From assembly GCA_976226885.1 (NCBI GenBank), contig OZ320314.1:72354001-72418000 (forward strand): a DNA stretch of 64,000 bases, written 5' to 3'. How positions within the stretch are numbered: the first letter of the stretch is position 1; every line of letters starts with the position of its first letter. Position numbers and translations under genes: made by a program. The notes under the pieces are model-generated. The model did no database searches. It was given only the letters and a program-made list of their open reading frames with translations, and was not told the DNA's origin. Origin of the DNA: Iphione sp. A-MEVVRFRX5. Its lineage: Eukaryota. Shown one piece after another: positions 6,301-24,759 of this stretch.

Positions 6301-9300
6301 CATGCATGCCCCATGCCTACATGTGCACATGGACATCCAGCCATAAAGGATTTTCATAAGTCTGGAACATGTGGTATATAGATGTACATGTATTTTGCTT
6401 TCTATGGAAATGAACTGTAGAAAGCCACCTTATGGACACGTCTGCAATAGGGACATGCCTCTAATAGGGATACCTTGAGGGAGAGCATATATTCTGTATA
6501 CTAATAATTATTGAAGTCTCTACCAGGGATATGGAACAGTTAGGAGGAACCAGGAGTATCTGTATATGTATAATGTGTGTGCGTGAACATTGTATTTTCC
6601 AAGGATATTGTGTGCCTAGCAAAATGAACAGTGTCCATGATACTATGCATCACAGAAAGGAGAGGAAACCTTGTAGTGATGTGGGTGGTGAGGACAGTCT
6701 GAAGCAAGGAGAGAGAAAGAAAGGAAAAAGTTGGGTCTAAAGATGCCTAACTTCATCAAAATTCGGCGAAATTTGTTGGGTTTCCTCAATGATGCCTAAT
6801 TTCAGTGAAATTTGGTAAAATTTGTAGGGTGTTGTAAAGATGCGTAAATTCAGTCTGGTGAAAGCAGTAATGAAGAGAAAGAAAGAGTCAGACAGAGAGA
6901 GTATGTCTGTGTGCATCGATAGTCTGGTAGTATCAGCATCAGGCTGTTCCGGAAATGAGCTGTATACAGTTATTTGCTGTTTTCTTTGCAATATCTACCT
7001 CCACCCTTCTAAAAAAAATGTCTCGTTGTCGAAATCTAGTATAGAACCCCACTGGCGAATATACATTCATCGTTAAGTTTGTTGTCGGTCAGACTCAAAA
7101 TGGTGTCGCATTTACACAATTGTGCTGAACCTCCCGCATTATAGATTATGCCACTTTTTCTGTTGTACTGAGGACCTCAGGATTCCTCAGTGTCTAAATA
7201 AAATGCATGCATATGTATTTTCAATTCTGTTGCTGATAGTTGGGAGGAGATTTAGCTCCGTCGTTTCCCTCATTTTTTGTTGAGCGATATTAGTTTTTAC
7301 ATTTATTGCCCAATCTTATCAGTATGAACTACTGGATAGAGGCATATGAAACAGCATGCATTCTTGTAATACAAACGTGTACGTGTGGAGACTCGCGCAT
7401 ACACACACACGCACGCACTCACGCACGCACACACACACACACACACACTCACACACACTCTCTCTCTTACACCCTCGCACGCACGCGTACATGTACTTGG
7501 TTGACCTGGTCCTCACCAGACTGTGGCGCCGCCACAAAGTCCGTGTACAGGAGGCACCGAATTATGTGCTTTTAATGGACTCCTTTAGCTTTTAACTGAG
7601 TGTGTTATATGTTAGTAAATAATGTACAGGCGGCTGAGTAAACCGGGCGTTCTCAGCACATCGAATACAGTAGTAATACGCCCACTGCTGTAAGGCCTGG
7701 GCATTGCCACAGGATCCCGGCTTGTTCTGCACACTATGCGCCCGCCGCACAATTTTCCTGGAGATCTGCACAAGGGCATTGCGGTGCGTGTCAAGGTGAA
7801 TGTGCCGGGCGCACTGGATGGGCGCCTTGAAATCTCTAACCCAAGGTAACCTTGTCAGGTGAGCTGTGGACGGGTAGTTTTCTGGTGAAGAAGAAGCGGC
7901 CACGCCGCACGCGCCCCAACACCCTCCCTCCCAGCCTCCCTCCCAGGGGACCTTCACCGCCCAGTCACCACCTGACTCCTCCCACAGCACGGTCGACTTT
8001 GATCTTCTCGTCTCCTCGTGCCGCTTCTATCATCATTGATTCCTTTTGTTGTCAAAACAAGACCCGCAGTGAGCGAATGGCTGAGCCGCTGACAGGGGAG
8101 GCAATTTCAGGCCCACGCAGGCTGACAACTGACAGGTAGCGGAGCCGCTGCCTCAGAAGAAGCATTGCGGGCGCCGGTTTGGTAATATAACGGACGACGC
8201 CCGGGTGGGGCGGGGGTCGCCAGGAAGATCGCGCTGGGTGCTGTGAGCACAGGTAGAATGGTCTTTGAGAGAATCGATAACCATTCGCTGGTAGTCGGAT
8301 GATAAGCCGACCACACCCTTCTGGTGCGCTAAGGCAGATTATAAACAAGCTCCAGCCTGCCTCTTAGTAACCTTTCTGTTCTGCGCCGCCCCCCCCCCCG
8401 CCCCGTCCCCACCATGGTCTCCTACTGTTGCCTCTTCTGACATTGTCTGCCTGTGTTTTGTCGTTTTGGCCTGCCGGTTTGTTTGTCGATTTACCTTGAC
8501 TATCTCTGTGTCCTGCAGGAGGCAGGACCTTCATATCATCCGTCTCTGTCTCTCTATCAACATGTATTTACCTTAAGTCATCTACTGTGCTCAGTCTCCT
8601 CTCCCCCCTCCCTACCTCCCCCTTTTCCCGATGTCCCCCTTCTCTTTCCTCCTCCTCCTTCTACTCTCTCTCCTTCTTTGTCACTGTCCCCGTCCCACTC
8701 TCTGTAGGATTAGTTATTGTCCTCCACCTCATAGAATCGGGGGGGGGGGCTTCGGAGGAATACTGCTGTCTGACTGTCCGACCTTCCATCATACTCTGGT
8801 GTGTCATATAACTCTAAAACCATTCAGTTAAATGAAATGATTTTGATATATGATATTTATGTATATGGACCCATGGCACTGGTAATTGTCGTAGTAATTC
8901 AAGTATTCATTAGAGAGACATTATGTCATTTTACTCTTTTGCTTACATACCCACAAACATATGTACCTTATTTTTGGATTTCTAGATCTGATAATGCACT
9001 AACACATACAGACACACTCACTAATACCCTTTCTGCCAGTACCACCTTGTAACAGTCTGACCAATGGAGGTGCAAACAAGCATGAAATTCATGGAGTGGG
9101 AATGATATCACAGTGGCTGATAAGCCTGGTACCCTGACCTATATACAGGGCAGGGTGCCAGGTGTGGAGGTGAAAGACAGTGGACTTCTCTCTTTGAGCT
9201 ATTGTACTGTTTAGTCCCATAATAATTATTTGGCAATGTTTTCAATGCTTGTTCTGACATTATCATGAGCACACATATAGATCTACCTTTAAATGAAGTG

Positions 9301-9803
9301 CCTATGTCAAATATATCATTAATTTGTTTTCTCCAGGCCTTAGAGTTCACATTAGAATATGCACAAACTCCCTGATTATCACCCACTCTTCACCTCTCTA
9401 GTATTTTTGCTAAAATAAAACAGTTATGCAAGGATTTAAATTGATACTCTAATGTGATGATTTAGATTCAGTTTTAATCTATGTTTTTTCAACCATAGAA
9501 CCATATGATGCCATTTAAATCTTTAAAACATCAGCTCTGACAGTTGCTTGTTTACATGGAACTCACTGCAAGTGTCCGGATTGCCCACTCAAAGAATGGC
9601 CACTTGACGATGGGGAATAACAGACTTTGCAGGTCCACACTCGTTTAAACGAGGACTGATCTGCTATGCATGCATTCCCCCTCCTCATTCTATCTCCATG
9701 CATTCCATCACCTCAGTCTGCCATAATCCTTCACTTACTGGCCCTTTTCCCCTAATCCTTCTGCCCATATCTGCCTGTCTGTCTGTCTGTCTGTCTGTCT
9801 GTC

Positions 9804-9852
<49 letters not shown>

Positions 9853-10865
9853 CTCTCTCTCCGTCTCTCTTTCACTCTCTCCCTCCCTCCATATCAGAAG
9901 ACTGGGCCAGAACTCCACACGGTTCCAAATTGACCTCCCACCTATCAACCAATCCTTACCCTTTAAGGAGCATAATGTTGCTACTGGCAAAAGGTCTTAG
10001 GTCATTACTTGCGGAAACATTTAATCTGGTGTTTTGGCCACTGTATCTATAACAACTGCCATTTCCCTTCGCCCGACACGTTAGAACTGGGGACTACCGG
10101 TGCCTTTCTCTGCAGTATGACAGTATAAAGGTAACAGTAGAGAGAGAGAAAAAAACAGTTTAAAAGTATTGGTTTAATGAAGGCTTTGTCCTCGTGCCTC
10201 GACGTGTGCAGTGTGACGTCACGCTCCCTTTAGCTCTTTTCTCTGCCGTTGCATCTTCCTTTTTTTGATGTTTGCGACACGTGAATCCTAAACACATGGT
10301 ATAGGTGCACACTTGGAGAAAACGGGGCTTCGATTCCGTGGACAGCGAGCCAAACGCATTAATTCCTGAAGACGCGCTCGGGCCGACATGCAATCGTTTG
10401 AGTAATATCTTAAGACCCAGATGTATGTGATAGGACAAGACTGTGTATACTGTTATGTGTGTTGAACAGGCGAATAGCTGACCGACGAGACCTAGAATCG
10501 TACGAAATTAGTTTCGTTGTGAGCCATTATTTATGCCGTGACAAAATGTCATCATAAGGACTTTTAATGTCATGAGTTATGGGTGTGAAGTGAAGCGTTA
10601 GTAACTTAGAATCTCACAAGTCCCGCCGTTTTATACAACACCGCCGCCGTTCTCATTGCCTTCTCCCAATGCACACATTACACATCATAGTCACTGCCAT
10701 CGGAACTGCGGATTACCCGTTGCTGATCTAACTTTTTTCTATAAATTTCCCTTCCAGGCTGTCAATCCGAAGCGCAAGAAGACGAAGGCCAAGAAACGTC
10801 AGTTCAAATCGCATAACGAGCACATGGGGGATATCCTTCAAGATTATTCCGACATGCAGAAATAG
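270..10865 (+). CDS. GTF2E2: General transcription factor IIE subunit 2 (TFIIE beta), 7 coding exons, 278 aa
   Basis: Hand-spliced exons 270-399, 1054-1148, 1633-1740, 1912-2097, 2861-2957, 3324-3436, 10758-10865. All introns are GT-AG with consistent phases (837 nt total). The protein contains the TFIIE-beta motifs [93 protein letters not shown] and [12 protein letters not shown]. Confidence 0.97.
1054..1148 (+). CDS. GTF2E2: GTF2E2 coding exon 2
   Basis: [24 protein letters not shown]; CAGCAG acceptor at 1051-1056; donor gtaaaa at 1149. Confidence 0.92.
1633..1740 (+). CDS. GTF2E2: GTF2E2 coding exon 3
   Basis: [36 protein letters not shown]; acag acceptor, gtaagc donor. Not in the ORF track. 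Confidence 0.93.
1912..2097 (+). CDS. GTF2E2: GTF2E2 coding exon 4
   Basis: [22 protein letters not shown]...[12 protein letters not shown]; tttcag acceptor, gtacct donor. Confidence 0.95.
2861..2957 (+). CDS. GTF2E2: GTF2E2 coding exon 5
   Basis: [32 protein letters not shown]; ttttttgcag acceptor, gtaaat donor. Confidence 0.95.
3324..3436 (+). CDS. GTF2E2: GTF2E2 coding exon 6
   Basis: (E)[37 protein letters not shown]; cacag acceptor, gtaagc donor. Not in the ORF track. Confidence 0.94.
7395..7490. repeat. Compound (CA)n/(CACG)n/(CT)n microsatellite
   Basis: Visible cacacacac/cacgcacg runs; these produce the spurious HTHTHT and CVCVCV ORFs. Confidence 0.9.
9085..9530 (-). repeat. Dispersed repeat, copy A (about 440 bp), family unidentified
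   Basis: The reverse complement aligns by eye with 19685-20125, e.g. gataatcagggagtt..gcatattctaatgtgaactctaaggcctggagaaaacaaa and taccaggcttatcagccactgtga..tcattcccact. Confidence 0.8.
9768..9890. repeat. (CTGT)n followed by (CT)n microsatellite
   Basis: Directly visible; explains the ERERER and SLSLSL ORFs. Confidence 0.95.
10758..10865 (+). CDS. GTF2E2: GTF2E2 last coding exon
   Basis: [35 protein letters not shown], which matches the conserved C-terminus; cccttccag acceptor, phase 0. Confidence 0.93.
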   Translation, partial: AVNPKRKKTKAKKRQFKSHNEHMGDILQDYSDMQK

Positions 10866-15800: not shown

Positions 15801-18231
15801 CAGGGGAGTCTTAATTTCTGACCTATGCGATTACCAACCAAATTGCCCATTCCGACCATTTTACCTTGGAACAAAATTAATTTTAATACATAACCTATAT
15901 GATTGATTATGGATTACCAACCAAATCGATTACCGACCATATTCACCCTCCGACCAATCGATAAAGGTTCAATATTGGTATATTTTACTATCAATTACCA
16001 ATTGCAACCTCTCTGATGTGTCTATCTCACACCCTGGAGAGGGTGGCTGGAGAGGTTGGAGTCATCCCCGTCGACTTCTCTGATGAACCAACACCTTGGA
16101 GAGGGTGGCGGGAGAGGTCGGGGTCATCACCGCCAACTTCTCTGATCTGCCCACACCTTGGAGGCATCAACAGCAACCTCTCTGATGAGCTCGCACCTTG
16201 GAAAAGGTGGCGGAAGAGGGTGGTGGGAGAGGTCAGAGGCATCAACAGCGACCTCTCTGCAGCGTTTCCCGCCAAACTAGGAGCAGCTCGCCTACATAAG
16301 GGGTCCAGACAGCTCCAGAAATCACTCTTCTCCTGGATTCCAGTGAAGACACACCAGCCACTCCAGACCTCTCCAGCCTTCTTCAGAACTCCCCAGCCTT
16401 CTCCAGCCTTCTCCATACACCAAGATGCCCAGAAACGAGCTTTCCCTTGGAGACAAGGTGAGGTTCATCAAGGTCTCCACATGTAGGAGCCAGAGGAGCC
16501 TTGCTGAAGAATTTGAGTTTGGCAAGACCCAGGAGCAGTGCATCCTGAAGAGAAAGAGAGAGATCATGGAGGAATTTGAAAAATGCCCAAACCCTTCAGC
16601 CAAGAGGCACCACTACTCTCCTGACCTCTCCCCCCTAGATGAAGCTGTTTACAATTGGTTTTGCAGAATGAGGTCCCTGAACATCCCAGTCTCAGAGCCC
16701 ACCATTCAGGAGAAGGTGCTTACCCTGAGAAAGGAGCTCAACCTCCCTGACTTCAAGGCCTCATTGGGGTGGCTCCAATGCTTCAAGATCAGACACTCCA
16801 TTGGGGCCCTCAAGGTGTGTGGGGAGAGTGGTGGTGTATCAGAACTGGCAGCGGAGGACTGGCTTGAGCAAATCCCTGAGAAGCTGAGGGGATATGCCCC
16901 CAGGGACATTTACAATATGGATGAGACAGGTCTGCTCCATAGGATCATGCCTGACAAGTCCCTTGCCCAGACAGGAGCCACAGCAAGTGGGGTCAAGAAA
17001 TCCAAAGAAAGGATCACTCTCTCTCTGTGTTGCAATATGGAGGGAGAGATTGAAAAGACTCTGGTGATAAGAAAGGCCGAGAAGCCCTGGTGCTTCAGAC
17101 ATGTTGACATGTCTGCACTCCCAGTCACTTGGAAGGCTAACTCCAGGGCCTGGATGACAGCCTCCATATTTCAGGAATGGATCCAGAAATTTAACCACAA
17201 GATGAAGAGGCAAGGGAGGCATGTTCTTCTATTGGATAATGCCCCCTCACACCCACATGATATGAAGCTCAGCAATGTGGAGATGGTCTTCCTCCCTCCA
17301 CATGCAACTTCAAGACTGCAGCCCCTGGATCAGGGCATCATCCAGAATCTCAAGTCCATCTACAAGAGGAAGCTCCTCAATTATTTCATCCAGAAGGCTG
17401 ACTCCATGGAGGGTCCCATAGACCTTCAGTCCCTGATGAAGTCTGTGGATCTGCACCGGGTGGTCTACTAGGTGAAGGACTCTCTCCAACAGGTCAAACC
17501 TGAGACAGTCAGGAAATGTTTCCTCAAAGATGGTGTGAAGAATTAGTGAAGAAGGCACAGAGAGTCCTCCCTGTGGTAGAGCCTTGCCTACCAGATGATT
17601 ACTGTAGAATGGATGCAGAACTCCCAGCCCACAATCAGGATGTGGACTTGCTGCCAAAGAAAGATCAACAAGAAGATGAAGAAGAGGAAGAAGAAGACAC
17701 ATCACCACCTACAATCTCCCATGCAAAGGCAATGGACATGATAGAGCAGCTAAGGCATCACTTCCTCTACCATGGTGCCAACACCCCTGGAAACCCTACT
17801 GGCAACCATGAACTCATTTGGGAAACATCTCCAGCAGTCCTAGAAGAAATAGGCCACTATTGATTCTTCTTTTAAGCCACAGTGATTACAGTGATTTTTA
17901 AACATTTATATGTATTTCATTTATTCATACATACCATGTACATACCATACTAATTTATTTGTCTGAATAAATGAACATTTCAGTCTGAATTATTTTGTTT
18001 TTAAATGTTTTTCCTTTATTGAACCTTTAATATTGATTATTGAACCTTTTTTCAATTGGTTTCTGTATGGCAATGATTAACTATGAAGGCAGAATAGATT
18101 ATAGAGAGAGAGGTAGAACAGGATATGGTTTCAAGCCCCAGACCCTCTACAAAATTGATTTCCGACCATATTCGCCATTTGGACCATTTTGGGTCGGACC
18201 CGACCAATGGTCGGAAATCGAGACTGTACTG
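15801..18231 (+). mobile_element. pogo/Tigger (Tc1/mariner superfamily) DNA transposon, 2431 bp, TA target duplication
   Basis: TA|CAGGGGAGTCTTAATTTCTGACC at 15801 versus the reverse complement of the right end, TA|CAGTACAGTCTCGATTTCCGACC (17/23 identical). Encloses a CENP-B-like HTH plus DDE transposase. Confidence 0.9.
16425..17863 (+). pseudogene. Disrupted Tigger-like transposase (HTH-psq, CENP-B HTH, DD30D catalytic domain)
   Basis: Motifs LDEAVYNWF, FKASLGWLQCFKIRH, IYNMDETGL, SKERIT, KANSRAWMT, LLLDNAPSH, LQPLDQGII. In-frame TAG at 17469-17471 where homology continues (VY*VKDSLQQVKPETVRKCF), then a frameshift near 17540 into the acidic tail ORF ending at 17863. Confidence 0.88.
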
Positions 18232-20125: not shown

Positions 20126-21437
20126 AGTCTGTATGAGCCACAGTTAGCCAATCAGAGATCTAGTTGTATGATCTGACCAATCAGGGGGTAGCTCTCTCAA
20201 TAGCAACAAAGTATCATTTTTATAGAACCTTTCTGACCAATGAGTACACTTTCACTAGTGAAGGATACATGGTAACCAGTCATAGAATACCTTTTACCCA
20301 ATCATGGAGCTTCCCCCACATTAGGGAGTGTGGGATGATTTTCCAGTAAACAATCACAGTGAAACAACCGATGGAGGAATTTCCATAAAGATAGCAGTGC
20401 GGTGTGTGATGTAAGAAACACTCATAGAGCGGTGTGCCATATCTGAAAGGTGTGGTGTGCCGGTCACAAGCTGGTGTGCCAGCCCACTATTTGAATGCAC
20501 CTGATGATGACCTCTTCTCAGCCCACTAATGAGGCCAAGAATCTAAAACTTCACATTACAGACTATCAACTTGAATATCTAGATAGAACGAGCTTCATCA
20601 TTTCCAGAGAAAGTTGATAGATATATGGTGGTGACAGATGGAGCCAGCAGAAAAGCAGCTTGGTGTGGGGATAGTAACTTAAGTTAATTACCGAAATTGC
20701 TGTTACTTTGATAATATAATGAGACAGGAGGCAACAATCTTGGCGACCAGACACAGACCACTTGAATTTGGTTTAAATTATCAGACTCGTTATCTCAAAG
20801 TAAATTTTTATATTCTGCAATCTTTATTGGAAATACAGACCGTCTGTTCACCAATTGTATACCGTGTTTATATGTGCGACATTATGATTAATGTTTTAGA
20901 AAGAGAAGCTGCTAAATTTACATGATGGATAATTTAAGTCATGCCAACATATACCCTCGATGTGGGAATTCTCGAGAGAAACTGTTGGTTGATAACGGGA
21001 TTATTGCTAATATATTTCCTGAATTGGACAGTGTATTTTTCAAATCGAGGAGAATGTGTTTTAGTGCTTTAGCCTAGCATCGAGCAAGTTTATTGCAATT
21101 ATATGAAATCAATTTCATTATTATCATGCCATCAGAATTTGGTGATAACCAATATTTCACTTTTTCGCGGTAAAAAGTTACTAGAAGTGGCTTGACTGTA
21201 GTTGCAATATAGTTAACAAACAGTTAATTTCCAGGCATTAATGGCTTTGTTCTCACATCTTGAATTCTATTTTCTGTAACCTGGTAAATCCTAAGTGGAG
21301 AGTATCGTTTTATGCACCTTTAGAACTTAACCCATCTCTGAGCATACCACCAGCCTTTGCAGCTGTTGGTTGCATTGTGGAGTTCTATAGACATGTAATT
21401 GATAGTTATTATTCCGTTTTCATTGTTAACCCTATCA

Positions 21438-21533
21438 GGCCGGCTTGTATCTCCAGAGATACATCCGTACAGGCCGGCTTGTATCTCCAGAGATACATCC
21501 GCATGGGGCCGGCTTGTATCTCCTGAGATACAT
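21438..21533 (+). repeat. Three 27-bp subterminal direct repeats GGCCGGCTTGTATCTCC(A/T)GAGATACAT, period 34-35 bp, each with an internal palindrome
   Basis: Copies at 21438, 21472 and 21507; TGTATCTC-nn-GAGATACA is self-complementary. Confidence 0.95.
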
Positions 21534-21802
21534 AACGCACATTCTATCTTTGAGAGAAGTTATTGGCTTAAATTTAAGTATTTTTCCATGCTTTTGGGGG
21601 GAAGAGTTAAGAATGAATGTTAATATGTATTTATTTATGATTTTTTAGCTAATTCGTTTAATTTTGATGGGGTCAGGGAGCAGAGAAAATTACATTTTAT
21701 CCCAACGGGACGTATGTCGTCTGCTAGCCGACAACAACGCATCGCGGGTTACCGCTCTGTTTTGACGCTACGTAAGAAAATCACTTTTTCATCAATTTGA
21801 CC

Positions 21803-23893
21803 ATGGAGAATGGCATGGAAATGGACTCTGATGATGATCTTAATGTGGAAAATATTCCTGATGAGATCAATCGAATTATAGATGGACAAGATGATGAGAC
21901 TGATGATGATACTGACAATGAATGGGAAGACGTGCCGGATGACGAGATTGACGATGACGTTCCATTAGGAGAATACTTGGATGTCACAGCAGAAAGAAAG
22001 GAACTAGATGGATGGAGGAAGATGAAATCAGGTACAGATGATCCTGTGGCACAAGTTATTTTTGATGAAACGAAGGCAGGAGTTGATGAAAGTGCCAATC
22101 TCAACAAAAATTCCAAGCCTCTTGACATTTTTTCACTTTTCATGTCTCTGGATATCTTCAATCTCATGGTTAGACGAACAAATGAAAAGGCAGCCAATGA
22201 ACCAGGAGTGGGGCCTAGATCCCATATGAAGAAATGGTTTAGAGTGTCAGTTCGAGAAATTATGAGATTTGTAGGCCTTGGAATGCTCATGGGAGTTGTA
22301 CGAAAGCCTTCACTGAAGAATTACTGGTCAGATATTCCAGAATTGGCAACCCCGATCTTCCCTGCAATGATGGCTCGAGATAGATTCCTCAGCATTCTGA
22401 GGTAAGAAAATAATTTCTGATTATTCCTGCTTCTCCCCTGTTATTCTAATTTACTTAGAAATGAAATCAGAACTCTCATTATATATTGTTATATTGTTAT
22501 GAAAAACAACTAATTTATTTCAATTGTGGATTATGTTTCAGAAATCTCAGGTTCTATCAAACTGAAAATGCTCAGGATGGTATTAGACGACCCTTCAACC
22601 CATTGTGGAAGTGCTTGCAACTAGTCGATCATTTCAACCAGATTGCCAAAAAGGTTTACCACATGGGACGTGAGTGTTCAGTAGACGAAAGCATGGTGGC
22701 CTTCAAGGGTAGAACCCAGTGCAGACAGTACATGCCGAAAAAACCACATAAGTGGGGCCTCAAGTTATGGACACTGGCTGAATCCACCACAGGTAAATAT
22801 CAATATTCACCTACCCATCTGACTTCCTCCTCCCCCCAAAAATCTCATGTATTGGGCTCTTTGTATGTTGTAATGCATACCTATCCATATCAATATCAGT
22901 CAGATTTGATATTTGTTGAGAACAATTATTGGGGGTGTGTATTGAAATTATTTAACATTGGTTTCAGGTTATGTATCCCAGATAATCCCTTACGCTGGTC
23001 GAGCTCAACGTGGTGGAAAGCCCCTGGCTGAGTACGTTGTTGTCAAACTCGTGGAGATGGCAGAACTAGCAAATAGTGGTGTTCATCTGTACATGGATAA
23101 TTATTTTACAAGTGTTCCTCTTCTGACAACCCTTTATAACATGGCAGTATATTGTTGTGGTACACTACGTAAAAATAGGAAGCATGTCCCTAAACGAGTA
23201 ATGACTAAAAATCCTGCCTATCTCCCCAAAGGGAGAGGTTCGAGTTGTTTCTTCAGCAGAAAAGCCCTCAGATTAATTGTTTGGAGAGATACTCGTGTTG
23301 TGCACCTCTTATCTACAATTCATGGTTCTGGATTAACTGATGTGAAACGAGGAGGCAGAGATAAGAAAACTGGCAAATATTCAAAGGTTACCCTGAAATG
23401 TCCTAAGGCTGTTGTTGATTATACAAAATTCATGGGAGGGGTCGATCTTTTTGACCAATATTTACAATATTACCAGCACAATAGGAAGACGGTACGGTGG
23501 ACAATGAAAATGTTCTGGTACCTGCTTGAATTAGCCAAAGTAAACTCATTTGTGATCTATAAGGCTCTGGACCCCAATAATGCCAAGACAACATTTCTGC
23601 AATTTACATTGAAGCTGGTGGGGGGATTGCTAGGTGATGCTGACACGACCACTGTAAAAAATAAGGAAAATGCAACCAAACTAACCAGGTTGACAAGTAG
23701 GTGCATGCCAACCACTCTTGATCGTAAGGCAAGGTGCAGGGTATGTTACTTGAGAAGTAGGAATGGATTGGAAACTAAACAAGGGCAAACGAAATACGGA
23801 TGTACTGGTTGTGAGGTCCATTTATGCCTCCCCACCTGCTTTACGCTCTATCACACGAAGCGTAATCTCATTGCTGTAGACCTGGAGGAGTAA
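21803..23893 (+). CDS. piggyBac transposase (PGBD-like), 3 exons (21803-22401, 22542-22792, 22968-23893), 591 aa, uninterrupted after splicing
   Basis: Junctions read MARDRFLSILR|NLRFY and WTLAESTTG|YVSQIIPYAG. Catalytic SVDESM, YMDNYFTS and MGGVDLFDQ are present, as is the C-terminal Cys-rich domain CRVC..YGCTGCEVHLCLPTCFTLYH. Introns are 22402-22541 (gtaaga..tttcag) and 22793-22967 (gtaaat..tttcag); exon lengths sum to 1776 nt. Confidence 0.92.
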
Positions 23894-24759
23894 ATAAGAT
23901 CATGTACACCCAAGAAAATGTATCCAGATAATCTGAACATGTTATAAAAAAAAATGAACCATACCTCTGTTGTCCTGTTATTCGTAAATCCAATGTTTTC
24001 TATTACAAAGAGAGAATCACTCACAAGCGTACAGTTGCCAGTTACGACTGACAAAATGAAGCGTAACTGTATTTCGGCATCTACATTAATTTTTACACCC
24101 CTTTATTCTTATAAACTCTGAATTAAATCTGCTTTCAGGCTTGGCAAAATACAATATTCATTAATATCTATAATTGTTTTATTCATAAACCTCTCTAAAT
24201 ATGCTTATTTCTATCATTTTCGTGAGTCTCTATAGTCCGAAACGTCATGCTCGTAATTATCCCCGGCCGCTGCGCTATGTGACGTCATAATCATTACCGG
24301 CCTGTAGTGCGCATACATTCCGCTAGATGCCGGCTCGATAGGGTTAATATATCAGTGAGTGAAACTTTAAAAAACAAGGGAGAGATTGAGAGTTAAGTAC
24401 AGTATTGAGTTAAAACGATATTCCGTGAATGTGATTTTCGTGTCCTAATCTCTCTACCCTCTTTCTTCTATCTTCTTATTTCCTTCTGTTCTTTCAGCTC
24501 TCTTACACATCTCACTGCTTTCTTCCTCTCGCCTCTATATCTATTTCTCAACATTTCCTGCAATATGTCAATATTATGTACACAGCATATATACATGCAT
24601 ACCTCATGTACATAAAATGTACATGCTGTGTGCTCATCCTGCATAATAAAAGGTATTAAACCACCGCTGCATCCTCTCTCTCTATATTTTCCTATCATCC
24701 CTCCAAGTACATTTTATCCAGTAATCGTCCTGTTAATCTGTGTTGTTGTCTTTAACTGG

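What the first reader, a model, noticed from the sequence alone, without database searches (positions are those of the whole stretch)
21803..23893. Complete piggyBac element whose transposase is split by two spliceosomal introns and is intact after splicing
Seen: the ORF track shows three disconnected pieces. Removing GT-AG introns of 140 bp (phase 2) and 175 bp (phase 1) gives one 591-aa frame with an acidic N-terminus, the full DDD triad and a complete Cys-rich C-terminal domain, inside terminal repeats and a perfect TTAA duplication. Established: model piggyBacs (T. ni piggyBac, piggyBat) have single-exon transposases, and regulated splicing restricts P-element activity to the germline. Inference: a possibly active, ORF-finder-invisible piggyBac lineage whose activity could be splice-controlled, and a candidate new genome-engineering transposase.
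Basis: partly seen in the sequence, partly recalled or inferred. Interest (0 to 1): 0.78.

Follow-up and report, generated by a model that had tools for sequence, protein, structure and literature searches.

The report
Two-intron piggyBac transposon, structurally intact
This is a complete piggyBac jumping gene whose enzyme gene is split by two genuine introns inherited from its lineage; it is a tidy example of a known kind of element, and nothing shows that splicing switches it on or off.

Summary
A 2,914-bp piggyBac element (21430-24343) lies between TTAA duplications, with CCCTATC... terminal repeats. Its transposase is in three exons, separated by GT-AG introns of 140 bp (phase 2) and 175 bp (phase 1). 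The exons match Pfam DDE_Tnp_1_7 positions 2-86, 90-165 and 168-349 in order, followed by the Cys-rich tail. All three catalytic aspartates are present.

Both introns sit at the same codon and phase in relatives only 40-44% identical, found in other assemblies and themselves TTAA/TIR-bounded. Each intron is also precisely absent in some relatives. They are therefore inherited spliceosomal introns, not later insertions.

No sequencing run was listed, so splicing, expression, copy number and activity remain untested. The 'splice-controlled' idea has no support here.

An intron in a piggyBac transposase is already documented: Daphnia Pokey, confirmed by RT-PCR (PMC3849761). This scan has also noted several intron-bearing piggyBacs on other DNA of this same genome.

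Verdict: a new member of a known kind, of modest interest. The most useful addition is the pattern of intron gain and precise loss across the lineage.

The parts
21426..21429 (.). Left TTAA target-site duplication
21430..21444 (+). Left terminal inverted repeat, CCCTATCAGGCCGGC
   Evidence: Inverted-repeat pair I1. The pattern search gives 2 hits in the window against 0 expected.
21434..21533 (+). Three 34-bp subterminal direct repeats. Each holds GGCCGGC and the 18-bp palindrome TGTATCTCCAGAGATACA. They are putative transposase-binding sites (inference).
   Evidence: TRF reports period 34, 2.9 copies, 90% matches. The palindromes are I5-I7. GCCGG motifs show ~34-bp phasing at both ends.
21534..21802 (+). 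5' non-coding region. Promoter and 5' UTR are presumed but not mapped.
   Evidence: No ORF here; CpG o/e is 1.06 over 21430-21802. The ATG at 21803 is in an accATGg context.
21803..22401 (+). Exon 1 (599 nt). It encodes the acidic N-terminus and the first part of DDE_Tnp_1_7, and ends inside the Arg codon after RDRFLSIL.
   Evidence: (profile positions 2-86)
22402..22541 (+). Intron 1: 140 nt, GT-AG, phase 2, GC 25%. If retained, a TAA stop follows immediately and the product ends after 200 residues.
   Evidence: The donor sits at the same codon and phase in L004, L003, L009 and L010 (the acceptor was also read in L004 and L009). The intron is precisely absent in L005.
22542..22792 (+). Exon 2 (251 nt). 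It carries the first catalytic Asp, in the SVDES motif.
   Evidence: (profile positions 90-165)
22793..22967 (+). Intron 2: 175 nt, GT-AG, phase 1, GC 35%. If retained, the frame shifts and a stop follows at 23029.
   Evidence: Same codon and phase in L004 and L005 (both splice sites), and in L006, L007 and L008 (acceptor only). Precisely absent in L003, L009 and L010.
22968..23893 (+). Exon 3 (926 nt including the stop). It carries the second and third catalytic Asp (YMDNYF, GGVDLFDQ) and the Cys-rich C-terminal domain.
   Evidence: profile positions 168-349 plus zf-Tnp_2; piggyBat 9c0f at E 1.7e-29 and piggyBac 6x67 at E 5e-17.
23894..24328 (+). 3' non-coding region. ATTAAA at 24122 is a possible poly(A) signal. 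Two internal GGCCGG motifs lie at 24263 and 24297.
   Evidence: sequence
24329..24343 (-). Right terminal inverted repeat, CCCTATCGAGCCGGC on the minus strand
24344..24347 (.). Right TTAA target-site duplication

Best explanation
Window 21430-24343 is one insertion of an autonomous-type piggyBac (PBLE) DNA transposon from an unnamed lineage.

Shown:
- It has TTAA duplications, CCC...GGG terminal repeats, and three phased GCCGG-containing subterminal motifs at each end.
- Its three-exon gene reads as a 591-residue DDD transposase with a C-terminal Cys-rich DNA-binding domain.
- The introns are inherited lineage features. On the tree, intron 1 was already present before the nearest sister lineage (L009) split off. 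Intron 2 arose after that split.
- Each intron has since been lost precisely in some sublineages.

Inferred:
- The element is transcribed from its 5' end, and both introns must be removed by the host spliceosome to give the enzyme.
- The enzyme would then bind the ends through its Cys-rich domain and cut and paste the element at TTAA sites, like characterised piggyBacs.
- The introns are most likely ordinary, constitutively spliced introns that are neutral or aid expression, not a regulatory switch.
- Whether this copy is active now is unknown.
For: The exons match consecutive Pfam profile ranges. The catalytic residues and Cys-rich domain align to solved piggyBac and piggyBat structures.

Intron composition fits real introns: GC is 25% and 35% against 42-46% in the exons, with consensus-like donors and pyrimidine-rich acceptors.

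Comparative evidence:
- Intron 1 donors sit after the same two bases of the same Arg codon in L004, L003, L009 and L010. L005 reads straight through.
- Intron 2 splits the same Gly codon in L004, L005, L006, L007 and L008. L003, L009 and L010 read straight through.
- The intron sequences and lengths in these relatives differ from the window's: hundreds of bases to 3.8 kb where both ends could be placed, against 140 and 175 bp, with no DNA similarity outside exon 2.
- L004 and L005 are themselves bounded by TTAA + CCCAKTC terminal repeats; L010 has candidate TTAA + CCCTTT ends.

Tree: the window sits in a 13-row clade (support 93/92). Every more distant relative is continuous across both intron positions. 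At least 3 state changes are needed for intron 2.

Precedent: the Pokey transposase intron is spliced, shown by RT-PCR (PMC3849761).
Against: - There is no RNA evidence. No sequencing run was listed, so the junctions 22401/22542 and 22792/22968 are predicted, not observed.
- Only one copy is in the window, and no close relative (above 44% identity) is in the protein collection. Age, copy number and insertion polymorphism are therefore unknown.
- Exon CpG depletion (o/e 0.37-0.49) is like that of the flanks. This could mean long residence under methylation.
- The zf-Tnp_2 score is just under Pfam's cut-off (23.6 against 24).
- The promoter and poly(A) site are not mapped.
Confidence: 0.8

Rival explanations
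1. Splice-regulated transposon. One or both introns are retained in some tissues, as with the third intron of the P element. Full-length transposase would then be made only in the germline, and intron-1 retention would give a truncated 200-residue N-terminal protein acting as an inhibitor.
For: Retaining intron 1 gives an immediate in-frame stop. Retaining intron 2 shifts the frame to a stop at 23029. Either event would therefore abolish the enzyme. The analogy with the P element is established knowledge.
Against: - There are no expression data.
- Both donors are close to consensus, so neither looks like a weak, regulated site.
- Sublineages lost one or other intron precisely, and two of them (L005, L010) keep open transposase exon frames; the third (L003) has a degenerate second catalytic motif. 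Neither intron is therefore indispensable to the lineage.
- A product truncated after exon 1 lacks the C-terminal DNA-binding domain that recognises piggyBac ends.
Confidence: 0.1
2. A dead copy. The two interruptions are junk that entered after insertion, or assembly noise, and merely look like introns.
For: Only one copy could be examined, and no transcript was available.
Against: - Removing the two stretches restores the frame exactly, and the Pfam profile continues within 2-3 positions across each junction.
- The same codon and phase are interrupted in relatives at 40-44% identity, from several other samples, by unrelated intron sequence.
- The stretches have no terminal repeats or target duplications of their own.
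Confidence: 0.03
3. A domesticated host gene (PGBD-like, with introns as in PGBD5), not a mobile element.
For: Published surveys discuss introns in piggyBac-derived genes mainly for domesticated ones: PGBD5, PGM and TPB2 (PMC5381638).
Against: - The terminal inverted repeats, TTAA duplication and subterminal repeats are intact.
- The catalytic triad is intact, unlike in PGBD5 as tabulated in PMC5381638.
- Relatives sit at unrelated loci with TTAA-flanked ends of their own, clear in L004 and L005.
Confidence: 0.03

Closest known systems
Pokey (piggyBac superfamily, Daphnia)
   Same: An autonomous piggyBac-superfamily element with TIRs. Its transposase gene is interrupted by a short spliceosomal intron that must be removed to give the full DDD enzyme. 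Splicing was shown by RT-PCR and excision in yeast (PMC3849761, PMC3315735).
   Different: Pokey has one intron of 68-84 bp, is 4-10 kb long and targets rDNA. This element has two introns (140 and 175 bp) and is a compact 2.9 kb. Whether the intron positions coincide could not be checked because no Pokey sequence was on hand.
T. ni piggyBac and piggyBat (model, structurally solved transposases)
   Same: TTAA target, CCC...GGG termini, DDE_Tnp_1_7 core with the DDD triad, C-terminal Cys-rich domain, acidic N-terminus, and a similar length (591 aa against 594 and 578 for the PDB chains). Matches: E 5e-17 to 6x67 and 1.7e-29 to 9c0f for exon 3.
   Different: The model elements have single-exon transposase genes (established knowledge). 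End architecture also differs: here there are three GCCGG motifs at ~34-bp phasing on each end, instead of the 13-bp terminal plus 19-bp internal repeats of T. ni piggyBac (recalled from memory).
PGBD5 (domesticated piggyBac gene of chordates)
   Same: A piggyBac-derived coding sequence interrupted by several spliceosomal introns (PMC5381638).
   Different: PGBD5 is an immobile host gene without TIRs, and its canonical aspartates are not retained according to that paper's table. This element keeps its ends, TSD and triad.
P element (splice-restricted transposition)
   Same: A DNA transposon whose transposase needs intron removal. Retaining an intron would truncate the protein.
   Different: The superfamily is different. 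Regulated retention is demonstrated for P, and nothing of the kind was tested or indicated here.
Unnamed intron-bearing piggyBac relatives found here (L004, L005, L003, L009, L010; proteins P0001-P0006, P0037-P0042)
   Same: Same clade on the tree. Intron positions and phases are the same where present. L004 and L005 have clear TTAA + CCC... termini.
   Different: Only 40-44% protein identity to the window. Some have introns bloated to 1.5-3.8 kb by tandem repeats, and some lack intron 1 or intron 2. L004 and L005 carry an extra 1.5-2 kb 3' module that the window element lacks.

Membership tests
piggyBac superfamily (PBLE) | TTAA target-site duplication | tested here: met
   TTAA at 21426-21429 and 24344-24347, directly abutting the terminal repeats.
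piggyBac superfamily (PBLE) | Terminal inverted repeats beginning 5'-CCC and ending GGG-3' | tested here: met
   CCCTATCAGGCCGGC and CCCTATCGAGCCGGC, 13 of 15 identical; 0 matches expected by chance.
piggyBac superfamily (PBLE) | DDE_Tnp_1_7 (PF13843) transposase core with the DDD triad | tested here: met
   The three exons match profile positions 2-86, 90-165 and 168-349, with E 1.7e-19, 1.2e-16 and 1.6e-34. The aspartates align with piggyBac and piggyBat.
piggyBac superfamily (PBLE) | C-terminal Cys-rich domain (PF13842) | tested here: met
   zf-Tnp_2 at E 7.7e-05, 23.6 bits against a cut-off of 24. The CxxC...CxxC...H.C...C...H pattern aligns with the piggyBat tail. The Pfam score is marginal, but the pattern is complete.
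piggyBac superfamily (PBLE) | Precise cut-and-paste transposition | not testable with these tools
   Needs an excision and integration assay.
Spliceosomal introns in a transposase gene (as in Pokey) | GT-AG borders, frame restored, and homology continuous across the junctions | tested here: met
Spliceosomal introns in a transposase gene (as in Pokey) | Position and phase conserved in diverged relatives, with unrelated intron sequence | tested here: met
   Intron 1 is shared with 4 relatives and intron 2 with 5; both are precisely absent in others.
Spliceosomal introns in a transposase gene (as in Pokey) | Spliced junctions observed in RNA | not testable with these tools
   No sequencing run was listed for this stretch, so no reads could be laid.
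Splice-regulated transposon (P-element type) | Tissue-specific intron retention that limits transposase to the germline | not testable with these tools
   No RNA runs were available. Indirect evidence is against it: donors are near consensus, and each intron is dispensable in some sublineage.
Two-gene piggyBac with a KolX-like accessory gene (earlier notes; PMC9587614) | A second small spliced gene, tail-to-tail with the transposase | tested here: not met
   Only 450 bp follow the stop codon. The only minus-strand ORFs there are 67 and 41 aa, and the longer one overlaps the transposase stop. There is no DNA similarity to the 3' modules of L004 and L005.

The most novel reading that the evidence does not exclude
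A whole piggyBac lineage has carried spliceosomal introns through many rounds of transposition and across host genomes. It has repeatedly lost single introns with base-pair precision. This would imply that DNA transposons undergo cDNA-mediated (reverse-transcriptase-dependent) intron loss like host genes. Intron content might also tune the element's expression or help it escape silencing. In the boldest form, splicing restricts this element's activity to particular tissues.
Probability: 0.12. Interest if true: 0.6.

Novelty: new member of a known kind. Interest (0 to 1): 0.3.

Why it matters
Surveys based on ORF finding, and the main piggyBac review held here (PMC5381638), discuss introns only for domesticated piggyBac genes. 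Intron-bearing mobile lineages like this one are therefore likely under-counted when people mine genomes for intact piggyBac transposases.

The comparative result gives a small, clean system for studying intron gain and loss in a DNA transposon: two introns at fixed positions, gained stepwise and then lost precisely in sublineages.

As an engineering candidate it is one more intact PBLE. Its value depends entirely on an activity assay.

Tried and rejected
- RNA test: the look-up of sequencing runs (kind any) on the whole element listed no run. Read laying therefore could not be used, and there are no junction, depth or copy-number data.
- All searches were exon by exon. Length and junction codons were checked by arithmetic only.
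- Big profile search (search of protein representatives): not used. The family scans left no doubt about the protein.
- Second accessory gene: rejected for lack of room and of similarity.
- Other copies: none in the window. The findings index gave a blank by sequence, which means nothing.
- 'ORFs' in the long introns of L004 and L005: these are translated tandem repeats, not genes.
- Identity of assembly GCA_029979725.1, which holds the sister lineage: not found in the paper library.
- Literature: searches for a general statement on introns in mobile piggyBacs found only Pokey.

Full report
**What is there.** The + strand of 21600-24100 shows three ORF pieces. The sequence gives these bounds:

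| Part | Coordinates | Length | Notes |
|---|---|---|---|
| Exon 1 | 21803-22401 | 599 nt | |
| Intron 1 | 22402-22541 | 140 nt | GAG\|GTAAGA...TTTCAG\|A, phase 2 |
| Exon 2 | 22542-22792 | 251 nt | |
| Intron 2 | 22793-22967 | 175 nt | CAG\|GTAAAT...TTTCAG\|G, phase 1 |
| Exon 3 | 22968-23893 | 926 nt | includes the TAA stop |

The exons sum to 1776 nt, which is 591 codons plus stop. The split codons are AG|A (Arg) and G|GT (Gly). Each exon frame is free of stops.

The joined product has no reference.

**Is it more than chance?** Yes.
- The three exons match Pfam DDE_Tnp_1_7 in consecutive profile ranges: 2-86, 90-165 and 168-349 of 349, with E 1.7e-19, 1.2e-16 and 1.6e-34. zf-Tnp_2 follows at the C-terminus (23.6 bits against a cut-off of 24).
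- Intron 1 falls inside the conserved RDRF..ILR|.L.F motif. Intron 2 falls inside AES.TG|Y. Removing each intron restores the motif.
- Exon 2 aligns to T. ni piggyBac (6x67) across the first catalytic Asp (SVDES against TIDEQ).
- Exon 3 aligns to piggyBat (9c0f, E 1.7e-29) and piggyBac (E 5e-17) across YMDNYF and GGVDLFDQ. Its tail aligns to the piggyBat Cys-rich domain.
- The first 60 residues hold 28 D/E and 1 K/R.

**The element.** The finding's coordinates cover only the coding span. The element runs from 21430 to 24343 (2,914 bp).
- Ends: TTAA|CCCTATCAGGCCGGC... on the left and ...GCCGGCTCGATAGGG|TTAA on the right. The end pattern occurs exactly twice in the window, against 0 in 100 shuffles.
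- The left end has three 34-bp direct repeats (21434-21533). Each holds GGCCGGC and an 18-bp palindrome.
- The right end also has GCCGG motifs at about 10, 42 and 76 bp from the tip, mirroring the left end. I read these as transposase-binding sites; that is inference.
- No other copy, tRNA-like unit or Rfam family lies in or near the element.
- Only 450 bp follow the stop codon. There is no room for the tail-to-tail accessory gene that earlier notes describe in other piggyBacs of this genome.

**Are the interruptions introns?** RNA could not be consulted: no sequencing run was listed. The case therefore rests on composition and comparison.

*Composition.* The introns have GC 25% and 35%, against 42-46% in the exons. 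The donors are near consensus.

*Comparison.* A word search with exon 3 found only unnamed ORF fragments. The best hits, at 40-44% identity, start within a few residues of the exon-3 boundary. I fetched their DNA, ran tblastn with each exon, and read the borders.

| Locus | Intron 1 | Intron 2 |
|---|---|---|
| Window | present | present |
| L004 | present | present |
| L005 | absent (reads ...CTA AGA TAC... straight through) | present |
| L003 | present | absent (reads straight through) |
| L009 | present | absent (reads straight through) |
| L010 | present | absent (reads straight through) |
| L006, L007, L008 | not covered by the contig | present (acceptor only) |

- Where intron 1 is present, a GT donor follows the first two bases of the same Arg codon.
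- Where intron 2 is present, it splits the same Gly codon in phase 1.
- Intron lengths in the relatives run from hundreds of bases to 3.8 kb where both ends could be placed. Outside a short exon-2 stretch there is no DNA similarity to the window.
- L004 and L005 are complete elements with their own TTAA + CCCAKTC... ends. L010 has candidate TTAA + CCCTTT... ends.

This excludes post-insertion junk and a domesticated host gene.

**History of the introns.** A maximum-likelihood tree of the exon-3 region gives:
- The window sits inside a 13-row clade (support 93/92).
- P0042/L009 is sister to the window plus an 11-row group (95/88*, and 100/99* for the 11).
- All more distant relatives are continuous across both positions.

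The simplest reading has three steps. [quoted passage not shown] Intron 2 arose after L009's lineage split off. Precise losses followed: intron 1 in L005, and intron 2 in L003 and L010. The minimum is 3 changes for intron 2.

The root is set by outgroup choice, and the inner polytomy is unresolved. The number of losses (one or two) is therefore uncertain.

**Mechanism.**
- Shown: the anatomy of a complete PBLE, and inherited introns.
- Inferred: transcription from the 5' end; removal of both introns; translation of a 591-aa DDD transposase that binds the phased subterminal motifs through its Cys-rich domain; cut-and-paste at TTAA.
- If intron 1 is retained, the protein stops after 200 residues. 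If intron 2 is retained, the frame shifts to a stop at 23029. Splicing is therefore obligatory for the enzyme.

Obligatory is not the same as regulatory. The donors are strong, and each intron was dispensable in some sublineage. Two of the three intron-loss sublineages (L005, L010) still have open transposase exon frames, whereas L003 has lost its second catalytic motif. A product truncated after exon 1 would also lack the end-binding domain. I put the splice-switch idea at about 0.1.

**Known or new?**
- Model piggyBacs have single-exon transposase genes (established knowledge).
- The main survey held here discusses introns only for the domesticated PGBD5, PGM and TPB2 (PMC5381638).
- However, Daphnia Pokey, a piggyBac-superfamily element, has a 68-84-bp transposase intron confirmed by RT-PCR (PMC3849761). 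Its transposase excises the element in yeast (PMC3315735).
- This scan's earlier notes list several intron-bearing piggyBacs elsewhere in this same genome, with one, two and six introns. Those are unchecked AI notes and are used only as leads.

This is therefore a new member of a known kind.

**Limits.**
- There is no transcript, no second copy, no empty site and no activity data.
- Exon CpG depletion resembles that of the flanks. The copy may not be very young.
- The promoter and poly(A) site are not mapped.

Noticed in passing
window 16425-17471 (+): A 348-aa ORF with DDE_1 (E 6.6e-36) and HTH_Tnp_Tc5 domains. This is a pogo/Tc5-type transposase about 4 kb upstream of the piggyBac.
   Followed up: partly
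window 21434-21533 and 24263-24336: Both ends of the element carry three GCCGG(C) motifs at ~34-bp phasing. On the left they lie in three 34-bp direct repeats, each with the 18-bp palindrome TGTATCTCCAGAGATACA. This end architecture differs from the T. ni model.
   Followed up: partly
window 21430-21802 and 23894-24343, compared with the exons and flanks: CpG o/e is 1.06-1.23 in the non-coding ends of the element. It is 0.37-0.49 in its exons and 0.40-0.53 in the flanking DNA. Both introns hold no CpG at all.
   Followed up: no
L004:11101-12548 and L005:11100-12519: The 1.45-kb regions downstream of the transposase stop in these two relatives are 83% identical in DNA, although their exon-3 proteins are only 57% identical. 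This may be a shared or exchanged 3' module, possibly the accessory-gene region of earlier notes.
   Followed up: partly
L004:6087-7590 and 7845-10030; L005:6226-9992: The introns of these relatives are bloated to 1.5-3.8 kb by tandem repeats shared between the two elements. Gene callers translate these repeats into spurious 150-210-aa 'proteins'.
   Followed up: yes
L009:1383-1947 (GCA_029979725.1, JARPNT010033372.1): The sister-lineage copy has a further break and frame change inside the exon-1 region, with a TTTCCAG|G acceptor. This is probably a third, lineage-specific intron.
   Followed up: partly
window 21781-22290 (-): A 169-aa antisense ORF lies opposite exon 1. It is Ser-rich and mirrors the acidic GAT/GAC-rich coding strand, so it is most likely spurious.
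   Followed up: no
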